From positions 25,738 to 89,737 of the forward strand of contig ADNK01001574.1 of the NCBI GenBank assembly GCA_000320545.1: a DNA stretch of 64,000 nt, given 5' to 3'. Positions within the stretch are counted from its first letter, which is position 1, and each line of letters starts with the position of its first letter. Below the pieces are notes generated by a model that did no database searches, was not told the origin of the DNA, and worked only from the letters and a program-made list of their open reading frames with translations. This document shows, piece after piece, positions 1,621 through 46,392 of the stretch. The DNA comes from Bigelowiella natans CCMP2755 (lineage: Eukaryota > Protista > Cercozoa). The position numbers were made by a program, and so were the translations under genes.

Positions 1621-3371
1621 TAAGCAGATAGACGATAGACTGATCAGTTTATAAACAGATCTTAATTCAGAAGCAAAAGGACTGCTGCTAGTTTGATGTC
1701 CGATTCTCATTTTCGTCGTCAATCATCCCTTCTCTGCATTAATAATTACCAGAAGTATCCGTCTATACTCGAAGTTAGACATCGACTTTGTAGAATTTTG
1801 GCACGCTGAGTGCTCGCTATTTATTGAGTAATAGTTTGTTACTCTGCTATCCGGATTGCTGCTATTCTGTTGTTCTTGGTCCTCTCCTTTCCCATCATAA
1901 TCCTTGCTCTCACCACCACCAGCCCCCCCATTGTTTCTAGGTCGTTTCCTGTTCGTCGGCTCCTCGAGAATGATGTTGATAGCGATTAACAGTACGAGAG
2001 CCCACAAGCACATGAAATATCTGATGGGTAAATGAATACATATATGCAGAGGTGGTCGTCATCCATTGTGCTCTCTCATCTTCATTGGTGGGAGGAGTGT
2101 TATTGTATTATGAACGAGGTAATATCAAATGATTTCTTCTTTTATAACCCTGGGGCAGTGACAGCATTCATCCACGAATTTCTTGGTAATATGTGCGGCT
2201 CGAAAGTGCTCTTTTCCCAGTCGTTGATATGGCTGCTCTGCTTTGCACCAATGATGGTTTGCCCGCTGCTACTACTGCTGTTTTCAACCGACCCTGCATC
2301 ATCGAGAAACGAGAAGAGTAGCTGAAATGCAGGACCGAATACCATTCCTAACATCCGTGGAATCTGTGAAGGGGAAGGAGGAGGAAGAGGAGGAGGAGGA
2401 GAGAAAAGAGAAATAAAATGAGGAAACCTACAGTAGAATCCTTTCCACCATGTTATCAAATGCAAAACAAATGTTTCGTAATACATCATCATCATCTTCT
2501 ATCCATCCACAAGTGAAGTGGGGATCCCATACCTGCATTCTCATGATCCATCGTGTACGATCTTCTTTCCTCGTCACTCTTGCTGTATATGAGATGGCAA
2601 GGTCGACATTCGATCCCCCTATCCCTGCCAGTGCTCTTCCCATTATCAGTAACATGAGAGACCGCATTCCCCACGCACTTCCGTACATTGCCTAAATTAT
2701 TTGAATAGCCTCGTTATCAGTCACACACTGGGAAATGCCACTACATGACATACAGAAGTACATCATATGAAATAAGAAAGAAAATATGAATAGAGCAAAT
2801 CCAATTCATCACGGATTCGTCGTACGTTTCCAATGATGACGAAGGTAATAGTGACGTTGAAGATGCCACGGAATGAGAACTTGTCCGATATCCAGCCTGT
2901 AAGGAAGAAGTTGGTGATATTTAAGGGGACTGTGTTCAATAGTAGTCCTGTTGCAGTGTAAAACTTGCAAATATTCGTCAGAGATTATGGGAAATTACAG
3001 TGATTCCTAACCTGCAATGGGACGACTGAGCATCGATGCGACCGAGAACACCTGCATAGGTGTGCGTTAAAAAACATATCTATTCCACTCTTATTGAGGA
3101 TCGAGCATTGAGAATATCTTACAGATATGGAAACGGCGAAGGCGGTCTTTCCGCCATTAAGCCCCCCGACGTACGTGAGAAGAGAGGGCATGATAATACT
3201 AAGGTTATGTGTCAGGCATGATTTACCAATGCAACGTCTCAATAGAGTACATGGCTCATAAAGAAAGAACATATTCAGGGCAAAGTTCACGTACCTGTAC
3301 TCTACGCTTAACGTCATGATAATCCATCCGTTAAGAAACAGGGATCTGAGGTAGCGTTGCCCCTCCCCCAT
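1..3371 (-). CDS. Major facilitator superfamily transporter (MFSD8-like), multi-exon, 3' end runs off the window
   Basis: Exons translate to SIIMPSLLTYVGGLNGG, GWISDKFSFR (MFS motif A-like), LLIMGRALAGIGGSNVDLAISYTARVT (motif B-like), RMLGMVFGPAFQ and further hydrophobic segments. The true start may lie in an upstream exon near 3480. Confidence 0.85.
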
Positions 3372-19703: not shown

Positions 19704-20410
19704 GTCGCACTCCCTTATTCGCCAATTTTGGCCCCACAGATGAGAGGATAGGGGGGAAAGGAGAGGGAGGGGGAAATCCGCAAGATATTCGCACATGCTG
19801 TGATCTGCATGCATTGTTAATGTTCAATTTGAGCTGCGTTGGTTGCAGTCCTCCATTATTTCTGCAGGCCAGGCGGCTTGTTCCATCATTTCCTATTCTT
19901 CCGGACGCAACCTCATCAGATGTTTCGGGCTTCAAATATTGCCCAATTTTTTCTGAACATTCTCATGAGATTCCCAATTTCAAACTGCATTCAAATTTGA
20001 CATGCGACCGTTGACTTCAGCGTGTCACCATGTTGAACGCAAAGTGCAGTAAATTACTGCTCTGCGACAATGAAAGTACGAAATAACACCCGGAGATTCT
20101 CTCGAGATGGTATAGGAATCACAACGGGTCACACATCCGATACGAGTACCGGAAAATAATCTCTATTGTTGTTATCATACTGTTGTGCTGCCGATCATGT
20201 CGTCAGCTGAGTGTTAGATTGGGAATAGTAATATCTCTTGTCATAGTACATATTTTACAACAACGGAGAATATCCTATTTTTTTTGACAGAATAGAGACG
20301 TTACACATATCTCAAAAGGGGCTAACGGAAGAATGAAGCCCCCACACCCTCCACGCAGTTCCTACTAAAAAGATCGTCGAGAGGGGAGGACTTGGCTGTA
20401 AAGCTTGACA

Positions 20411-22903
20411 ATGAGTCAGCTTAGCCGAAGAAACACTGGACTAAATGATTCTTCATATTACAACAATCTTGGTACCTCTCGCTTTTCTCCTTCCATCTAT
20501 CTATCATTCCCCCATTGACTCCCAATTTGGAAACTCAATTTCTTCCAGACTTAAAGCAGAGTTCAAGGACCAAGGAGGATGATATCATTGTGAACCAGCA
20601 CCAAACGATATTTCACACGCTTCGAGAGCACGGGAAGCTGTTCAGCATCATTTTCGACAATTGGTTTCAGTTTGTAGCACTGTTGCTTACGATTAGCGGA
20701 GTAATAGTGAGCATGACTCTTATCATCAACTACTCCGTATCTGATTATTTACATCGGAATAACAATCCCACGACTGCGTTCGAGAGGCTCTTCATCAAGG
20801 AGCAAGAAGATTTCGGATTCTTGCTTTGCATGCGTATGATATTCTAGATAGATTTGGCAAACAAATTCTCAGTCTTCCGTGCATTCTTTTTACACTATGG
20901 CACTCTCACCCTTCTGCCTGTCGTGCGCGAGTTTAACCTTTAAAGTATCCTGCAAAGCCATTTCTGCCGCCGCTTCGCCGCCAATCTACTTCAAATGCAC
21001 AATCTCTATTCTAATATTAATACAACCTTGCAATCACCATTTCCTTTATCTTTTAGGAAAGCAAGATCAAGAAGGGAATACCTGTCCGGATGAAAATTTT
21101 GCGTTTCGTACAAAGTCAATATTCAATGTGACGCGTGAAGACTTCGACCATACATTACCGGTGGACATCGATACGTGGCCATTGTCTATTGGGGTAAGTG
21201 ACTTACTAGTGCAGTAGCCAGGCGCTTACAAATACATTCCATACATAAAAAGAGGTGGAGACAGCATAGAGCGAGGGACACGGAGACAAGAATCAAACAA
21301 TATTGCACCCTTTAACGATAACATAACATGAAAACTCAAGAAGTACCGTGTTTTTCTTCATCTAGACGGTGCCAGATGCGTACGTCGCACTTATGAAGAA
21401 ATGCTGGCAAATAGAGCCTTTTCATTGCAACTCATCAACGATTAATTGTGCTCTGAATCGGAATTTCGATGTGGTTAACAAGATACCAGAATACGTCACT
21501 TTCCGGTAAATTTGCTCTCCCCCGCCACCTCTTCTGTCTCTTTCTCCCCTCCTCCCCTTCCACTTGACCTATCTCTACCTAAGAACCAAGGTCTTACATG
21601 ATTTTTTATTCATACTAACTATCTCGTTGTCAATCGTTCGAAAGTCAGAGTGTGACTACTGTTTATACCAAAAACTACAGAGAATGGAAATTTTGATGAA
21701 TTTTCTATGATAAATTTCCTTTATCGTCAACAGTACACGGAAGCGTGTATTTGTGTGTGTGTGTGTGTGTTTGTGTGTGTTTGTGTGTCTATATTATCGT
21801 GTTTGGTGGTGAATTCCCTTTGTGCAGGTTCAGCTGGGGCACACGAGAATTCATGCGTGATTCGACGTGCACGCGCCTGTACATCGTCGGCTACCACACT
21901 AGCAACAAGGTTTTTGTTGCTGTTGTTGTTGTTGTTGTTGTTGTTATACGTGTAGTGGGAAATCTTCCATTCTTTCCAGCACACCGACGATTTCATTCCT
22001 GTGCATTGTATACATGCTGTTCGTCGGCATGAGAATAGGAGGAGGTGCCTTGTTCGCTGCTCGTTTTTGCGTATCATGAGTGTCTTTAGAAGCAGGAAGC
22101 AGAGTTTTTGACGACGCTCGGAAATCATACAAAACGCACTATATTTTTCATTATTTTCCCCCGTAAAAATCGGAGTATGCGCCACACCATTGATATACCA
22201 AACCCATCTTCACAGAACATAGAGCTAAACGACGCTATCTCGACTGCCACGCCTATTTATGGGTGAGACCTGTGTGACTTCAACGCCGCGTGTTTTCCAT
22301 TCCAATCCTCCTAACTCATATCACACTCATTAGGTACAACCAAGTGCTGGAAGTGCAGGCGCATTTCTCCAAATTCGTGAGGTTGAATGGTGAGGAGGAC
22401 AATCGAGTCGAAGTCCATACTTACCAGGGCAATCCCGTGGCTATCAACGACACTTGGGTGGGGGAGAGGCAGTATCTGGCTGATACGCCGGTGGCAACAC
22501 TTGACCTCTACATGCTTAGCCCTGTCGGTATGCTATGGTTTATTGATGTTTCAAAGGAGCAAAGCACCTTCGACTACAAAACAGCGCTAGCTGCTGTTCT
22601 CTCAGTCGCCGGGTTCGTGTGATATTGTGTGTGCGTGACGACGCTACTTATTCACATGAATAACATCATTTTAGGTTTTTGAACATCGTCGCCAAATGCT
22701 TCTGGAAGAAGGACAGGAGTGGATTTTGGCTCTTCAGATATGGACACAGAAACAGAACACTTGAGAAAAGCTATCGGCGACGGCACTTCAGGGTTTTGAA
22801 TGACGATGAATTGCTTGACGAAGATAATAGTGGCAAACTCCATTTCAACCGCGGTGATAGTATTTCTATGACAACTAGTATTGCAGGCTCAGCTATACAA
22901 TAG
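20411..22903 (+). CDS. Two-TM protein with large extracellular loop (~420 aa, 8 exons); candidate PAC/TMEM206-like ion channel
   Basis: Phase-compatible exons at about 20411-20471, 20549-20833, 21057-21193, 21366-21505, 21829-21909, 22217-22262, 22333-22612 and 22675-22903. TM1 WFQFVALLLTISGVIVSMTLIINYSV, TM2 TALAAVLSVAGFLNIVAKCFW. The gene is well supported; the family call is inference. Confidence 0.6.
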
Positions 22904-22929
22904 CCAACAGTACTTTAGTAGTAAATCAA

Positions 22930-23880
22930 GTGATCGAAATGTGATGGCATCATGTATATCTCGACCACACATGTATCATTACCCACGTACATGCAAGCAA
23001 GCATGTGTGCAATCATTTTTCCAAAGCCAAGCATGGCCTAGACGGAGTGTGTGGCATGGAATCTGACTTTTGGCGGTGATGATGAATGCATAGCTAAGTG
23101 ACAATTTAAAAGCAGCACAGGCCAGCAGCTATCTAACGTATACGCACGTCTAGAGGCCACCGAATGCATACAACATCTAACATGATGAAGCAATATGTAT
23201 CGTAGTGTGCAGTGCGAAACAACCGCATTTGTCAAACGCGGTGTGTGTGTGGTTTTAGTGCGCTAAATTGAATCTGGATCCCATCATTGCGACCAGTGCA
23301 ATTACTTTGACTCGCAGCTGCGATGATGGGCTAGTTGCCAAGATCAGCATGTACATGTAATGACTATTCTTGGGGGGAAAATGAAAAAAATGAGGAATTG
23401 TTCTTTCAGAAGCCATGCTGTGCATTATTGTGATTGGAGTTGTGTTGCTTCCATGCATGTTGACACAATGAACAATGTGAACTTGCATCGCATAGGCCCG
23501 CAACACTCGGCTCGCTGCGTTGCACGTTATGTCATCGCAACATTGAGATGGCGCACTAAAAAAGTCGAGATGAGGGGCTACTAGCTAGCCCGATAATGAC
23601 GCGTCTTCCAAGCATGCATGCTGAGCGCTGCAGCCGGCGACTACCGACTTCATGTTGCAGTGAACCACACACACTATGCAGTGCATGGCATCATTCATCA
23701 ATGCACCAACAAGTAGCAGATTTTGCACAGCTGTCAAAGCGCCCATCACGAGGATGCTGAACATGCTGCATTTTTGCACGGTCATTCGCGCATTAGCACA
23801 AAAATCGAGAAAAAAAAGCAGGTGCTGCATGATCTTGATCTTGATTAAACGAGTTCTGCTGATGTATCATTAGCTTGAGA
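22930..23880. other. Palindromic-tetramer-rich intergenic zone 3 (convergent 3' ends)
   Basis: Rich in CATG/TGCA/CTAG, e.g. gcatgcatgc, ctactagctagc, catgtacatg. Confidence 0.65.
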
Positions 23881-24403: not shown

Positions 24404-24447
<44 letters not shown>

Positions 24448-25344
24448 GAGAGGGGATAGTGCATCTGAAGTAGCACCGAACCGAATAACTGACCTATATG
24501 GCACATGCTTCGATCCAGATGACAGCGCTGCAATGACGTTGCCTTTTGTTCCCCAACCCCGTCCCAAATGTATCAAAAAAATAAAGAAATCATTCGTACT
24601 CCCTCGTAATGCAGCAAATCTCGATAACTTTTTTCTCGTAAAATCACTATTTCCCTCCAAAACTGGCAAGGTTCTGGTTGGGGTATATTTAGATATGTGG
24701 TGATTGCATTTGTTGTCTTCAGTGATATTACCAAGAGCTGAAAGGGATTGGTTGATGCTCTGAGCTTCTTTCATCTGTTCCGCTGTCGCGCCTAAATGTC
24801 CAAAATGCAGTAATATATGGCTACGCATTCATTTAAAATCCTAATGTTAAAGAGCAGCATACAAGATGCTTGCGCCGCTCACACGAAATGGGGTCATTAG
24901 CATTACTGTTCGCTCGCAAAACCTACAACGCTGCTTGTCGCTAGTACCTGTTTTGGAAGCGCGCTCACAGCCTGCAAGGTCTACGAGTGATAGCTTGCCG
25001 AACGTCGCTTTCCCTGCACACCATAGATGCATTAGACAAACGTTTATAACGACGAAAATGTCAAATTGTTTCAAGATTCTTCCTCTAAAGGAGCAGAGCA
25101 GTCCAGGAGCGAGATATGGCAATGAAGCACATGGTTGATAGTTATCAAACCTTTCTTCCCTTGTTTCTTTATTAGAACTGACAGGATCAGGTGTGACCTA
25201 GAGCTACCAGCATTCATCAACGTTGAAGATACCTATAAATGCCGAGGGTGACAAAAGAAAGAGATAAACTCAAAGCCCCTCGCAGGGTTTATTCTAATAA
25301 AGTTAAAAAGTAGTCCTGGATTTTAAATCAACAGGACCGAGATT

Positions 25345-43408: not shown

Positions 43409-44288
43409 TAGATTTGTTTAGAACAGCGTGCATGTGAATGTTTGATTCGATGAAATGGCATCTATGAGTACATATAACCTATCTATGAAAAAGAATGTGT
43501 TAATTCTAAAGTTAGCACCTGCAATTGACTGTCTCGGAAGGATTTAGAGGCATCCACTTCGTTCCAACTAATGCACAAATTCAAACAGAAGCACAACGAT
43601 GTATCACATATTTATATCCCCCCCCCACATATATGTATGTATACACATGTATGTATGTGTATATGCATAGCTAACAAAGAGCGAAAATATAATTGTAACA
43701 TTATACACCATTTTTATGGTCGCAATTGAGAGCACTTCCTCTTACAGAGTGTTTATTTCATAAACAAGCACCTTTTCCCCACTTTCCTACTAAGTTTTCT
43801 TGTGTTCTGGCTTTGATAGAAACCCATGTAAATTTTCCCTTCTGCAGAGAGCATGTCATAGGTAGGGGAACAAGCAACGCAGGGCCATGTTCAATACATA
43901 AAAGTTGCTGCATGTAAAAGCGATGGGAAAGGGGGGAACAAGGGCGAGGAAACACTACAAGCTGAAAATATCGGACGTCTTGGTGATTCTGGACATCTGA
44001 CCAAAGTCATGTTGTTTTTGAGATTTTGGAGAGAAATTTTTGTATTTCTTTAGGAATTCGATCTGCCACTTGGATCTAGCCCTGAACACATTGATGAAAA
44101 GCGATATCATCTCAAATTCGGTCGTGTGCGAAATTCAGTCGACTACAGCTTGCTGCCTATCGACCTGTTTTCAGAATTCACCATCTCCCTGTGGATCTTC
44201 AACTTCCTGGTGTTCCTTCAAATGTTCAATGCATGGAAAGACAGTAAGTAGATCTGCACGAATGGAGGCACGAGTAGCGGCCTTACAT
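43409..44288 (-). CDS. Small hypothetical protein, left paralogue of the head-to-head pair (3' end uncertain, possibly to about 43000)
   Basis: Phase-compatible GT-AG model: MNTRKLKIHREMVNSENRARSKWQIEFLKKYKNFSPKSQKQHDFEGKIYMGFYQSQNTRKLSRKVGKSWNEVDASKSFRDSQLQ...; indels relative to the right copy are multiples of 3. Confidence 0.5.
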
Positions 44289-45385
44289 GGCGTGGAGCAG
44301 CCTAGAAGAGTTTGAAGAGTGCGAAGGCAGTGACCATCCATCATGCGGTAGTCGGTAGTCAGTAACTGCAATGAGGTAGCGAGGTAGCCGTCAATGTCGT
44401 CAACGGTCGGAACGTACATCATTTCAAAAAAATCATGCATTTTGATCGTAGATTATCCGCGGACTCCGATCCTGCGACAGGCAGAATCAAGCATTTAAAT
44501 CAACTGGCCAAAAGGCTAACAGTGACTGCGGCCTGCGGCCGTATCATGAGGGCGTTTTTTGCAAGCGACAGCTTCTCCGTCGACAAATTAGGGACGATGT
44601 GCCGTCGATTCTAATTGCAACGACAAGAAGTTAGATCTACTGTTGCTTTTTGTCGTAAAAGATGCTCATACAGTGCTCTGTTGAGAGCCGCACCACATCC
44701 TTGATGGCTACCGCAGTTACCGCTGCCTCGCATTACAATTCTCTAAGCCCTGCTCTACCCAGATCCAAGCTTGCTCTAAGCCAGACCCACGCAATGTAAG
44801 GCCGCTACTCGTGCCTCCATTCGTGTATATCTACTTACTGTTTTCCCATGCATTGAACATTTGAAGGAACAACAAGATCCACAGCACGATGGCGAATTCT
44901 GAAAATAGGTCGATAGGCAGCAAGCTGTAGTCGACTGGATTGTGCACACGACCGAATTTGAGATGATATCGCTTTTCTTCAATGTGTTCAGGGCTAGATC
45001 CGAGAGGCAGATCGAATTCCTAAAGAAATACAAAAATTTCTCTCCAAAATCTCAAAAACAACATGACTTTGGTCAGATGTCCAGAATCACCAAGACGTCC
45101 GATATTTTCAGCTTGTAGTGTTTCCTCGCCCTTGTTCCCCCCTTTCCCATCGCTTTTACATGCAGCAACTTTTATGTATTGAACATGGCCCTGCGTTGCT
45201 TGTTCCCCTACCTATGACATGCTCTCTGCAGAAGGGCGAAGCCAGAACACAAGAAAACTTAGTAGGAGAGCGGGGAGAAGGTGCTTGCTTATGAAATGAA
45301 CACTCTGTAAGAGGAAGTGCTCTCAATTGCGACCATAAAAATGGTGTATAATGTTACAATTATATTTTCACTCTTTGTTAACTAT

Positions 45386-45388
<3 letters not shown>
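43665..45388. repeat. Large inverted repeat: arms about 43665-44295 and 44787-45388, spacer about 490 bp
   Basis: The arms are reverse complements. 43837-44067 is identical to the reverse complement of 45006-45236 (231 bp). The flanks carry scattered substitutions plus a 21-bp and a 9-bp indel. Confidence 0.97.
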
Positions 45389-45419
<31 letters not shown>

Positions 45420-46392
45420 TGTTGTGTTGTGTGCGTGTTTATGTGTGTGTGCGTGCATTAGTTTGAAGAGGACTTTACGACGTTCAGTGTCATTGCGGTA
45501 TATAATCATCTTATTCCATTTGAATATATTCATAGTCAGCGTTTTTCCTCCTTACACGTTGATTAACGCTATATTTATTTATTTGATTCTCCTACGACTT
45601 TTGCTCTAAGTTTACTCAAATTCCTCCCTTGTTAGCCGGTGGTTGTGATGATGATATGATGATGTGATGATCATGACGATGATATACGGATAGGGTATGT
45701 ATGTATACGTGTACGGACTCTTATTGGCTGCATACTTCATGGAAAAAGAATCAAATTTATGCTGTATTATCCTACCCCGAAGCATTCACCTTACTTTTAT
45801 TAATGTCGTTTGGGCAGAGACGACTTGTTGAGTACAGTATACGAGGAAGACGAGGTAAAGAAATTCTAAATGACGCTAAGAGAAGCTGTAGTTTAATTAA
45901 TACTTTATCAGGATGCTTACAGTCAATCTCCATGAATTATTTTGAATGATTTATTGTTTATATAAGGTGGTTGAACGAGACCATAACATCTCTCCAACAT
46001 CAGACAACAACCAAGCAAAAGGTTCATTAGTTGGAATGTCATCATCATCATCGTCATCATCATCATCATCTCTTTGATCTAAAGCAAGCTCAGTTCCAAT
46101 ATGTGTGCTGCGCTAATTCTGCTTATTTGTAGAAGTAGCTTGTATTTCACACTCTTAGTCATCATTCTCTGAACTTCTCCTTCATCAACTTATTTTCCAA
46201 TATTCATTCGTTTTACTAGGACTAGGCCAGCCATTCTCATTCGACATCGAAAGTGAGAGCGCGGCAAAAATACACTCCAATAAACAAAGTGCTGAGATCA
46301 AGAAGCAGATTGTGGAATTAATGGCCCAGTGTGAGGAGAGAATTAACCAAATTGAAGGAAAATATAGGGAAAAGGTACTGTTGTATCATTAA
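44794..46392 (+). CDS. Small hypothetical protein, right paralogue with a distinct coiled-coil-like C-terminus
   Basis: Model MNNKIHSTMANSENRARSERQIEFLKKYKNFSPKSQKQHDFEGRSQNTRKLSRRAGR..., then phase-compatible exons at about 45471, 45818, 45967 and 46220, ending ...EIKKQIVELMAQCEERINQIEGKYREKVLLYH*. Confidence 0.45.

What the first reader, a model, noticed from the sequence alone, without database searches (positions are those of the whole stretch)
20411..22903. Candidate PAC/TMEM206-like proton-activated chloride channel in a non-animal alga
Seen: an 8-exon, ~420-aa protein missed by the ORF track, with a cytosolic N-terminus, TM1, a large Cys-containing loop, TM2 and a basic tail. Established: this topology is shared by the trimeric PAC (PACC1/TMEM206), DEG/ENaC and P2X channels, and PAC is generally described as an animal family. 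Inference, from comparison with my recollection of human PAC: post-TM1 SVSDYLHRNNNPTTAFERLFIKEQEDFGFLLC lines up without gaps to PAC's TITDF...HPVMSV...APGIAL segment (D, P, G, L spacing kept). GYNQVLEVQAHFSKFVRLNGEE parallels its GFRTWVKMSLVKTKEEDGRE strand, and FIDVSKEQSTFDYKTALA parallels its pre-TM2 FIQKVQDIVTANPWNTIA. The GG..GL/GxS TM2 motif of DEG/ENaC is absent. If real, it extends PAC-fold channels to a distant eukaryotic lineage.
Basis: partly seen in the sequence, partly recalled or inferred. Interest (0 to 1): 0.8.

Follow-up and report, generated by a model that had tools for sequence, protein, structure and literature searches.

The report
PAC-like two-pass channel gene in alga
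The marine alga Bigelowiella natans expresses this spliced gene, one of at least six related loci (five with gene-like structure), for a two-pass membrane protein whose predicted fold most resembles the proton-activated chloride channel PAC, reported so far only from vertebrates and an acorn worm; no channel activity has been tested.

Summary
Observation confirmed. The eight GT-AG exons at 20411-22903 (+) give a 419-aa protein. Two independent transcript contigs carry exactly this spliced product, so TM1 and TM2 lie in one ORF. The public JGI model (Bigna1 88663) is cut short at the N-terminus and uses a wrong sixth exon.

Interpretation partly supported.
- By sequence there is no link to any known family. 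Pfam (TMEM206, ASC, P2X), the PDB sequences, a 1.84-billion-protein HMMER search with exon 7, two word searches, and metagenome and viral scans found nothing outside B. natans.
- The genome holds at least four paralogous loci plus one pseudogene-like fragment.
- AlphaFold2 with an alignment of these paralogues gave a model with pLDDT 62.7.
- In Foldseek the top 19 PDB rows are all PAC/ASOR/TMEM206 (E 2e-9 to 2e-6). DEG/ENaC/ASIC follows at 1e-4 to 1e-2, and P2X is not credible.

I conclude it is a new sequence family with a minimal, PAC-type version of the PAC/ENaC fold. Channel activity, trimer formation, selectivity and gating are inferred, not shown.

The scan's first readers flagged three other pieces of this genome as PAC/ENaC-like; these are probably the paralogues found here.

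The parts
20327..20410 (+). 5' UTR (minimum extent)
   Evidence: Transcript contig L014 starts at 20327 and L015 at 20334.
20411..20471 (+). Exon 1: start codon and cytosolic N-terminus (aa 1-20), including the Y17-N-N-L motif
20549..20833 (+). Exon 2: pre-TM1 helix, TM1 (aa 57-82, 20656-20733), the family-invariant Pro94, first beta strands, Cys114
21057..21193 (+). Exon 3: loop segment with invariant Cys125 and Phe132 and the N139-V-T sequon. This part of the model has low confidence.
21366..21505 (+). Exon 4: the conserved C-W-x-[IL]-[DE]-P-F motif (Cys174, Pro179, Phe180) and the Cys182/Cys189 pair found only in this paralogue
21828..21909 (+). Exon 5: invariant Trp211 and the Cys222-T-R-L-Y strand
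22216..22262 (+). Exon 6 (true exon, 47 nt): small helix at aa 239-245. The public JGI model lacks this exon.
   Evidence: Both transcripts use it. P0001 uses 21953-22044 instead.
22334..22612 (+). Exon 7: Tyr252-Asn253, four long beta strands, the pre-TM2 strand, and the first half of TM2 (from 22575)
22675..22903 (+). Exon 8: second half of TM2 (to 22705) with Lys351; Lys355-Lys356; the conserved post-TM2 motif (Asp357, Phe364, Gly367); a basic stretch; the D387-D-E-L-L motif; stop codon
22904..22940 (+). 3' UTR (minimum extent)
   Evidence: The transcripts end at 22939/22940.
21953..22044 (+). Intronic stretch that the public model Bigna1 88663 wrongly uses as an exon. It is not part of the mRNA.
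   Evidence: The P0001 peptide maps to 21956-22042. It is absent from both transcripts.

Best explanation
The gene encodes one member of a previously unrecognised Bigelowiella natans family: at least five gene-like loci, plus one pseudogene-like fragment. The proteins cross the membrane twice and have both ends in the cytosol.

The 250-aa extracellular or luminal loop is predicted to fold into the 12-stranded beta-domain of the PAC / DEG-ENaC-ASIC channel fold. It appears in the small, PAC-like version, with only short helical insertions and no thumb, finger or knuckle domains. Two family-invariant cysteine pairs probably stabilise it.

By analogy with every solved protein of this fold, I infer that three subunits assemble around a central pore lined by TM2. 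A stimulus sensed by the beta-domain would then be transmitted through the Pro94 wrist and the pre-TM2 strand to open the pore.

In this paralogue only, a lysine (K351) lies in the cytosolic third of TM2. That is roughly where PAC has its anion-selectivity lysine, which would fit an anion preference.

Shown: the gene, its splicing and expression, the paralogue family, the topology, and the fold match of the model.
Inferred: trimer formation, channel activity, selectivity, the gating stimulus and the cellular location. A Y-N-N-L motif and a D-D-E-L-L motif in the tails hint at endosomal or vacuolar sorting.
For: - Splicing and expression.
- Topology and positive-inside charge.
- Paralogues: C3597 (E 5e-21), C2648 (E 3e-19), C3193 (P0005), C1984, C3131 (intron-free 590-aa ORF) and a fragment on C1391. 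Family-invariant residues are P94, C114, C125, C174, P179, F180, W211, C222 and N253.
- Model: AF2 with alignment A5 gave pLDDT 62.7, with 187 residues at 70-90. Between the two TM helices it has exactly 12 strands and three short helices.
- Foldseek against the PDB: the first 19 listed rows are all PAC/ASOR/TMEM206 from human, frog, pufferfish and cow, at probability 1.00.
- Control: a useless single-sequence model of the mis-annotated protein gives no PAC hit.
- The ESM Atlas lists a PAC cluster among the nearest neighbours.
- The PAC architecture, and the conserved TM2 lysine as its selectivity filter, are described in PMC7904269.
- From my own knowledge, the AF2 ptm weights predate the first PAC structures (2020), so the fold was not memorised.
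Against: - No sequence or profile similarity to PF15122 or to PAC chains in the PDB, even at E<=10.
- The model has only medium confidence (pTM 0.48) and comes from an alignment of about five effective sequences. Loops 133-161 and 290-302 are unreliable.
- K351 is not conserved in the paralogues (F, S or A at that column).
- PAC's His98 maps approximately to Asn93.
- No oligomer prediction and no electrophysiology.
- No relatives were found in other chlorarachniophytes. This is odd for an ancient channel.
Confidence: 0.6

Rival explanations
1. It is a stripped-down member of the DEG/ENaC/ASIC cation-channel lineage rather than kin of PAC. DEG/ENaC is already reported in a few protists. On this reading the protein resembles PAC only because both are the bare common core.
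For: - DEG/ENaC homologues are reported from heterokonts and a filasterean relative (PMC10507113).
- PAC and ENaC share the same 12-stranded core (PMC7904269).
Against: - PF00858 gives no hit for the protein, its exons or any paralogue.
- Foldseek E-values are 5-7 orders of magnitude worse than for PAC.
- Only about half of each ASIC/ENaC chain is covered.
- There are no thumb, finger or knuckle domains.
- TM2 has no G-x-S / GAS motif (read directly from the sequence).
- An H48-G49 pair before TM1 is not conserved in the paralogues.
Confidence: 0.2
2. It is not a channel. It is a two-pass membrane glycoprotein with a beta-rich luminal or extracellular domain and another role: a cargo receptor of the Erv41/Erv46 kind, a receptor, or an adhesion or cell-surface protein in a fast-evolving lineage-specific family.
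For: - The family is restricted to B. natans in every search. It also has recent duplicates and a pseudogene-like fragment, as fast-evolving surface families do.
- The pore-relevant lysine is not conserved.
Against: - PAC and DEG/ENaC stand 3-5 Z units above Erv41p and cover both TM helices plus the whole ectodomain.
- Every protein of this fold listed in the searches is a channel subunit.
- TM2 and the motif just after it are conserved across paralogues that share only 20-30% identity.
Confidence: 0.15
3. The fold assignment is an artefact: AlphaFold2, given a very shallow alignment, imposed an ASIC-like core that it knew from training on a two-TM, beta-rich protein.
For: - Mean pLDDT is 62.7 and pTM 0.48.
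- The other four models have pLDDT 52-59.
- ESM Atlas recognition is low (1830) and its own model of P0001 has pLDDT 0.30.
Against: - The core strands have pLDDT 70-85.
- The model matches PAC better than the ASIC structures that were available at training. By my own knowledge of the training cut-off, PAC had not been seen.
- The ESM feature search is independent of AF2 and also lists PAC.
- The single-sequence control model does not produce the match.
Confidence: 0.1
4. It is a divergent P2X-type ATP-gated channel.
For: - The two-TM topology and loop size are the same.
- B. natans does have P2X genes.
Against: - PF00864 detects other loci in this genome (C465, C2421) but not this one and not P0004.
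- Foldseek probability for P2X chains is 0.08-0.30, with TM-scores of 0.22 or less.
- No P2X chain appears in the exhaustive VIA list.
Confidence: 0.01

Closest known systems
PAC / ASOR / TMEM206 (PACC1), proton-activated chloride channel (Pfam PF15122; PDB 7JNA, 7JI3, 7SQF-H, 8H8D)
   Same: - Two TM helices with cytosolic ends.
- A similar ectodomain size: about 250 aa here against about 200.
- A 12-stranded beta-domain with only a small helical insertion.
- Best structural match in three searches, covering more than 90% of the PAC chain.
- A lysine in the cytosolic third of TM2 in this paralogue.
   Different: - About 10% identity and no HMM or profile hit.
[quoted passage not shown] Here there is a multi-locus family in a rhizarian alga.
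- By range mapping, the His98 pH sensor is not kept.
- Four invariant ectodomain cysteines and a conserved D-P-Y-T-G..F-F-x-F-G motif after TM2 are features of the family itself.
DEG/ENaC/ASIC superfamily (Pfam PF00858), including FaNaC, PDPNaC1 and BRTNaC1
   Different: - No thumb, finger or knuckle domains.
- No G-x-S / GAS selectivity motif.
- No conserved HG motif.
- No PF00858 hit.
- Foldseek E-values far weaker than for PAC.
P2X receptors (Pfam PF00864)
   Same: The two-TM topology with a Cys-containing loop, and the trimeric-channel logic.
   Different: A different ectodomain fold. There is no credible structural or profile match, and true P2X genes lie elsewhere in this genome.
Unnamed 'Transmembrane protein' clusters of Mucoromycota, and a ciliate cluster carrying PF27811 (Y80K_N), in the ESM Atlas
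   Same: These are the nearest neighbours by language-model features (0.94-0.89), with similar lengths of 297-417 aa.
   Different: Their sequences could not be fetched with the tools here, PF27811 is not in the local Pfam copy, and the recognition score is low. Homology is untested.

Membership tests
PAC / TMEM206 (PF15122) | Match to the family profile HMM above Pfam's gathering score | tested here: not met
   No hit at E<=10 for the exons, P0001, P0004 or any paralogue. A six-frame scan of the whole genome with PF15122 was blank, but it was uninformative because the control genomes were blank too. phmmer and a profile search against the PDB, which holds PAC chains, were blank.
PAC / TMEM206 (PF15122) | Two TM helices, cytosolic N- and C-termini, and a beta-rich ectodomain of about 200-250 aa | tested here: met
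   Hydropathy peaks at 57-82 and 332-354, net charge +8 after TM2, and sequons and Cys in the loop. The model has helices 30-92 and 332-353.
PAC / TMEM206 (PF15122) | A 12-stranded beta-domain with only a simple helical insertion, superposable on solved PAC | tested here: met
PAC / TMEM206 (PF15122) | Homotrimer with a central pore lined by TM2 | not testable with these tools
PAC / TMEM206 (PF15122) | Conserved lysine near the cytosolic end of TM2 (human K319) as the anion selectivity filter | tested here: inconclusive
   P0004 has K351, K355 and K356. The alignment ranges place K319 between model residues 348 and 355. No residue-level alignment was available. K351 is F, S or A in the paralogues.
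PAC / TMEM206 (PF15122) | pH-sensor His98 at the TM1-ectodomain junction and its acidic pocket | tested here: inconclusive
   By ranges, model residue 94 corresponds to PAC 99, so His98 falls near Asn93. Only the C3131 paralogue has His before the invariant Pro. The acidic-pocket residues could not be mapped.
DEG/ENaC/ASIC (PF00858) | Match to the ASC profile HMM | tested here: not met
   Searches were blank. The genome scan hit only an unrelated weak site on C1119.
DEG/ENaC/ASIC (PF00858) | Large ectodomain with thumb, finger and knuckle domains around the beta core | tested here: not met
   The ectodomain is about 250 aa. The alignments cover only 168-268 of 342-525 residues in these chains.
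DEG/ENaC/ASIC (PF00858) | G/S-x-S (GAS belt) selectivity motif in TM2 and a conserved HG motif before TM1 | tested here: not met
   TM2 (aa 332-354) has no G-x-S motif. H48-G49 occurs in this paralogue only.
P2X receptor (PF00864) | Match to the P2X profile and to the P2X ectodomain fold | tested here: not met
   The HMM finds C465 and C2421 but not this locus, and P0004 is blank. Foldseek probability is at most 0.30. P2X is absent from the VIA wide list.

The most novel reading that the evidence does not exclude
This family, together with the unnamed two-TM 'transmembrane proteins' of Mucoromycota and ciliates that the ESM Atlas places next to it, are true homologues of vertebrate PAC. PAC would then be the animal remnant of an ancient, pan-eukaryotic family of trimeric (possibly acid-gated) anion channels of endosomes, phagosomes and vacuoles. 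It would not be a deuterostome invention or a convergent look-alike of ENaC.
Probability: 0.2. Interest if true: 0.85.

Novelty: new variant of a known kind. Interest (0 to 1): 0.72.

Why it matters
PAC/TMEM206 is described as a single-copy channel of vertebrates and one hemichordate, with no homologues in other kingdoms (PMC6663466). Its likeness to ENaC has been called structural convergence (PMC7904269).

An expressed, multi-locus family with the minimal PAC-type fold in a rhizarian alga would do three things:
- It would show that this trimeric-channel architecture is much older or more widespread than sequence searches suggest.
- It would give an outgroup for asking whether PAC and DEG/ENaC share ancestry.
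- It would offer natural variants (with and without the TM2 lysine, with and without the wrist histidine) for dissecting selectivity and gating.

It also corrects a public gene model.

Tried and rejected
- Exon-by-exon Pfam scan and PDB sequence searches: blank or noise only.
- Word search with exon 7: blank.
- The one large HMMER search, with exon 7: found only the genome's own annotated protein, plus two repeat proteins (P0002, a bacterial LPXTG-type protein; P0003, a RanBP-like protein). Their E-values come from 4-10 repeated weak stretches, so I rejected them as artefacts.
- Word searches with P0001 and with the paralogue alignment A2: only B. natans proteins.
- Metagenome scans with P0004 and A4, and a viral scan with A4: no relatives.
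- Single-sequence AF2 of P0001: pLDDT 32, useless. Its Foldseek run served only as a negative control.
- ESM Atlas with P0001: no usable hit.
- BFVD viral structures: nothing.
- PF27811 could not be tested because it is absent from the local Pfam copy.
- Exact-sequence look-ups of P0005 and of the C3131 ORF: no transcript contigs.
- The joined spliced model was never typed or sent to any search tool. Exons were joined only inside a local script, read from the window file, for translation, hydropathy and an equality check. All full-length searches used P0004, a database protein returned by a tool that proved identical to the model.

Full report
**1. What is in the sequence**

The window is eukaryotic DNA, about 43% GC. 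The source names of the matching database proteins identify it as Bigelowiella natans: EukProt EP00466, JGI Bigna1 88663. Earlier notes of this scan agree.

Reading 20000-23400 gives eight exons with canonical GT-AG borders:
- 20411-20471
- 20549-20833
- 21057-21193
- 21366-21505
- 21828-21909
- 22216-22262
- 22334-22612
- 22675-22903

Together they make 1260 nt, or 419 aa. The introns are 62-322 nt, and two of them carry microsatellites.

**2. Is the spliced model real?**

Yes. The word search returned P0004 (419 aa, source JGI). It is identical to the spliced model.

P0004 is encoded on two intron-free contigs from two JGI samples (L014, 1380 nt; L015, 1374 nt). These align at 99.7-100% to exactly the eight exons. 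They add a 5'UTR from 20327 and a 3'UTR to 22940. So transcripts join TM1 and TM2 in one ORF.

The public model Bigna1 88663 (P0001, 358 aa) has two errors. It starts inside TM1. It also replaces the true 47-nt exon 6 with an intronic stretch at about 21953-22044.

Searches were made exon by exon by reference. Once a tool had returned P0004, full-length searches used that id. Exons were joined only inside local scripts, read from the window file, for translation, hydropathy and the equality check.

**3. Anatomy**

- Hydropathy gives two TM helices, about 57-82 and 332-354.
- The stretch after TM2 has net charge +8, so both termini are cytosolic.
- The loop of about 250 aa carries 6 Cys and three N-x-S/T sequons.
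- The tails contain a Y17-N-N-L motif and a D387-D-E-L-L motif. These are short motifs, so any sorting role is inference only.

**4. Sequence searches for relatives**

All of the following were blank or gave only noise:
- Pfam on the exons, P0001 and P0004 at E<=10.
- The PDB sequence set, which contains PAC, ASIC, ENaC and P2X chains.
- A six-frame scan of the whole genome with PF15122. This was blank but uninformative, because the controls were blank too.
- A genome scan with PF00858, which hit only a weak unrelated site.

A genome scan with PF00864 found real P2X loci on C465 and C2421, but not this gene.

The single large HMMER search, with exon 7 against 1.84 billion representatives, found only P0001 and two repeat-protein artefacts. 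Word searches and metagenome and viral scans found nothing outside B. natans.

**5. A paralogue family**

Searching the genome with the full-length P0004, and then with profiles, revealed relatives:
- C3597 (E 5e-21) and C2648 (E 3e-19), which are near-duplicates of each other.
- C3193, which is P0005 = Bigna1 69801, 452 aa.
- C1984.
- C3131, an intron-free 590-aa ORF (L004:82-1851:-).
- A pseudogene-like fragment on C1391.

All full-length members have the same plan:
- a D-G-W motif before TM1;
- an invariant Pro after TM1;
- four invariant ectodomain Cys (114, 125, 174, 222 in P0004);
- a C-W-x-L-D-P-F motif;
- Trp211;
- a [YW]-N pair at 252-253;
- a conserved D-P-Y-T-G..F-F-x-F-G motif just after TM2.

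The invariant columns are listed.

Pairwise identity to P0004 is 17-28%. No member hits any channel family in Pfam. The family profile finds no PAC, ASIC or P2X chain in the PDB sequences.

Three other first-reader notes on other pieces of this genome carry PAC/ENaC-like titles. They prompted the full-length search of the genome and probably describe these paralogues. I could not see their coordinates.

**6. Structure**

Single-sequence AF2 of P0001 was useless, with pLDDT 32.

With the 11-row paralogue alignment A5, AF2 (no templates) gave a model of P0004 with these features:
- mean pLDDT 62.7 and pTM 0.48;
- 187 residues at pLDDT 70-90;
- a long helix 30-92 that includes TM1;
- twelve beta strands and three short helices between residues 95 and 327;
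- TM2 at 332-353.

Foldseek against the PDB:
- The first 19 listed rows are all PAC/ASOR/TMEM206, from Xenopus, human, pufferfish and cow. E-values are 2.2e-9 to 1.7e-6 at probability 1.00, with about 10% identity.
- Next comes PDPNaC1 at 1.8e-4.
- ASICs follow at about 1e-2.
- P2X chains appear at probability 0.08-0.30.

VIA-align second look:

The exhaustive VIA search of 48,161 representative chains does not depend on Foldseek:
- Ranks 3-11 are DEG/ENaC relatives.

Two checks on the result. As a control, the bad single-sequence model yields no PAC hit, with best E 0.26. Independently, an ESM-Atlas feature search with P0004 listed a PAC cluster at rank 20 (score 0.87, 173 of 256 features). 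It came behind unnamed Mucoromycota and ciliate 'transmembrane protein' clusters at 0.94-0.89. The recognition score is low, so this is a lead only.

From my own knowledge, the AF2 ptm weights were trained before any PAC structure existed, so the PAC-like result is not memorised.

**7. Interpretation**

The fold is the PAC / DEG-ENaC beta-domain between two TM helices. It appears in the minimal form that Deng et al. describe for TMEM206: a 12-stranded core plus a simple helical insertion, with ENaC/ASIC carrying extra domains (PMC7904269).

Structural similarity to PAC exists, and no other fold or family matches better.

What fails is membership by sequence profile. I therefore file this as a new sequence family with a PAC-type architecture, not as a TMEM206 orthologue.

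Functional residues:
- PAC's selectivity lysine (K319 in human) maps by alignment ranges to model residues 348-355. P0004 has K351, K355 and K356 there. K351 is not conserved in the paralogues.
- PAC's His98 maps near Asn93. Only the C3131 paralogue has His before the invariant Pro.

Proton gating and chloride selectivity are therefore open.

**8. Comparison with the literature**

DEG/ENaC homologues have been reported from a few protists: heterokonts and Tunicaraptor (PMC10507113).

My full-text searches found no description of PAC-like proteins in protists, fungi or algae. The library does not cover all journals.

**9. Verdict**

- Novelty: a new variant of a known kind.
- Interest is high for channel evolution. 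It is tempered by the medium-confidence model, the shallow alignment, the absence of relatives outside one species, and the lack of any functional data.

Noticed in passing
window 20411-22903; false exon at about 21953-22044: The public JGI gene model Bigna1 88663 (P0001) is wrong. It starts inside TM1, so it lacks exon 1 and most of exon 2, and it uses an intronic stretch in place of the true 47-nt exon 6 at 22216-22262.
   Followed up: yes
G000:C465:33953-35500 and G000:C2421:49667-51273 (loci L007-L010, L012, L013): The genome carries genuine P2X-receptor-like genes. The PF00864 exon hits reach 39.7 bits. They are unrelated to the gene studied here.
   Followed up: no
G000:C3597:154218-155462 (L021) and G000:C2648:39417-40697 (L022): Two paralogues of the family are near-identical recent duplicates on different contigs. 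Both have one long exon plus one C-terminal exon, and both seem to lack the strand region equivalent to P0004 residues 286-322.
   Followed up: partly
G000:C1391:77501-77647 (L040, about 1978-2163, minus strand): A short, isolated fragment resembling the C2648-type paralogue (the C-P-N-P-D-L-P-F... segment), without the rest of the gene. It is probably a pseudogene remnant.
   Followed up: partly
G000:C3131:49238-49852 (L004:82-1851:-): An intron-free 590-aa member of the family with a long, Ser/Arg-rich C-terminal tail.
   Followed up: partly
window 24412-25122, minus strand: Two ORF pieces match the kinesin motor domain (PF00225, E 3e-5 and 2e-6), so a spliced kinesin gene lies downstream on the opposite strand.
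   Followed up: partly
window 21752-21767 and 21922-21945: A (TG)n microsatellite lies in intron 4 and a (GTT)8 microsatellite at the start of intron 5. Read as protein, they produce the misleading poly-Cys/Val and poly-Val ORFs in the ORF list.
   Followed up: no
window 43409-46392: Another first-reader note on this window describes an inverted repeat with a head-to-head pair of small paralogous genes. I did not examine it.
   Followed up: no
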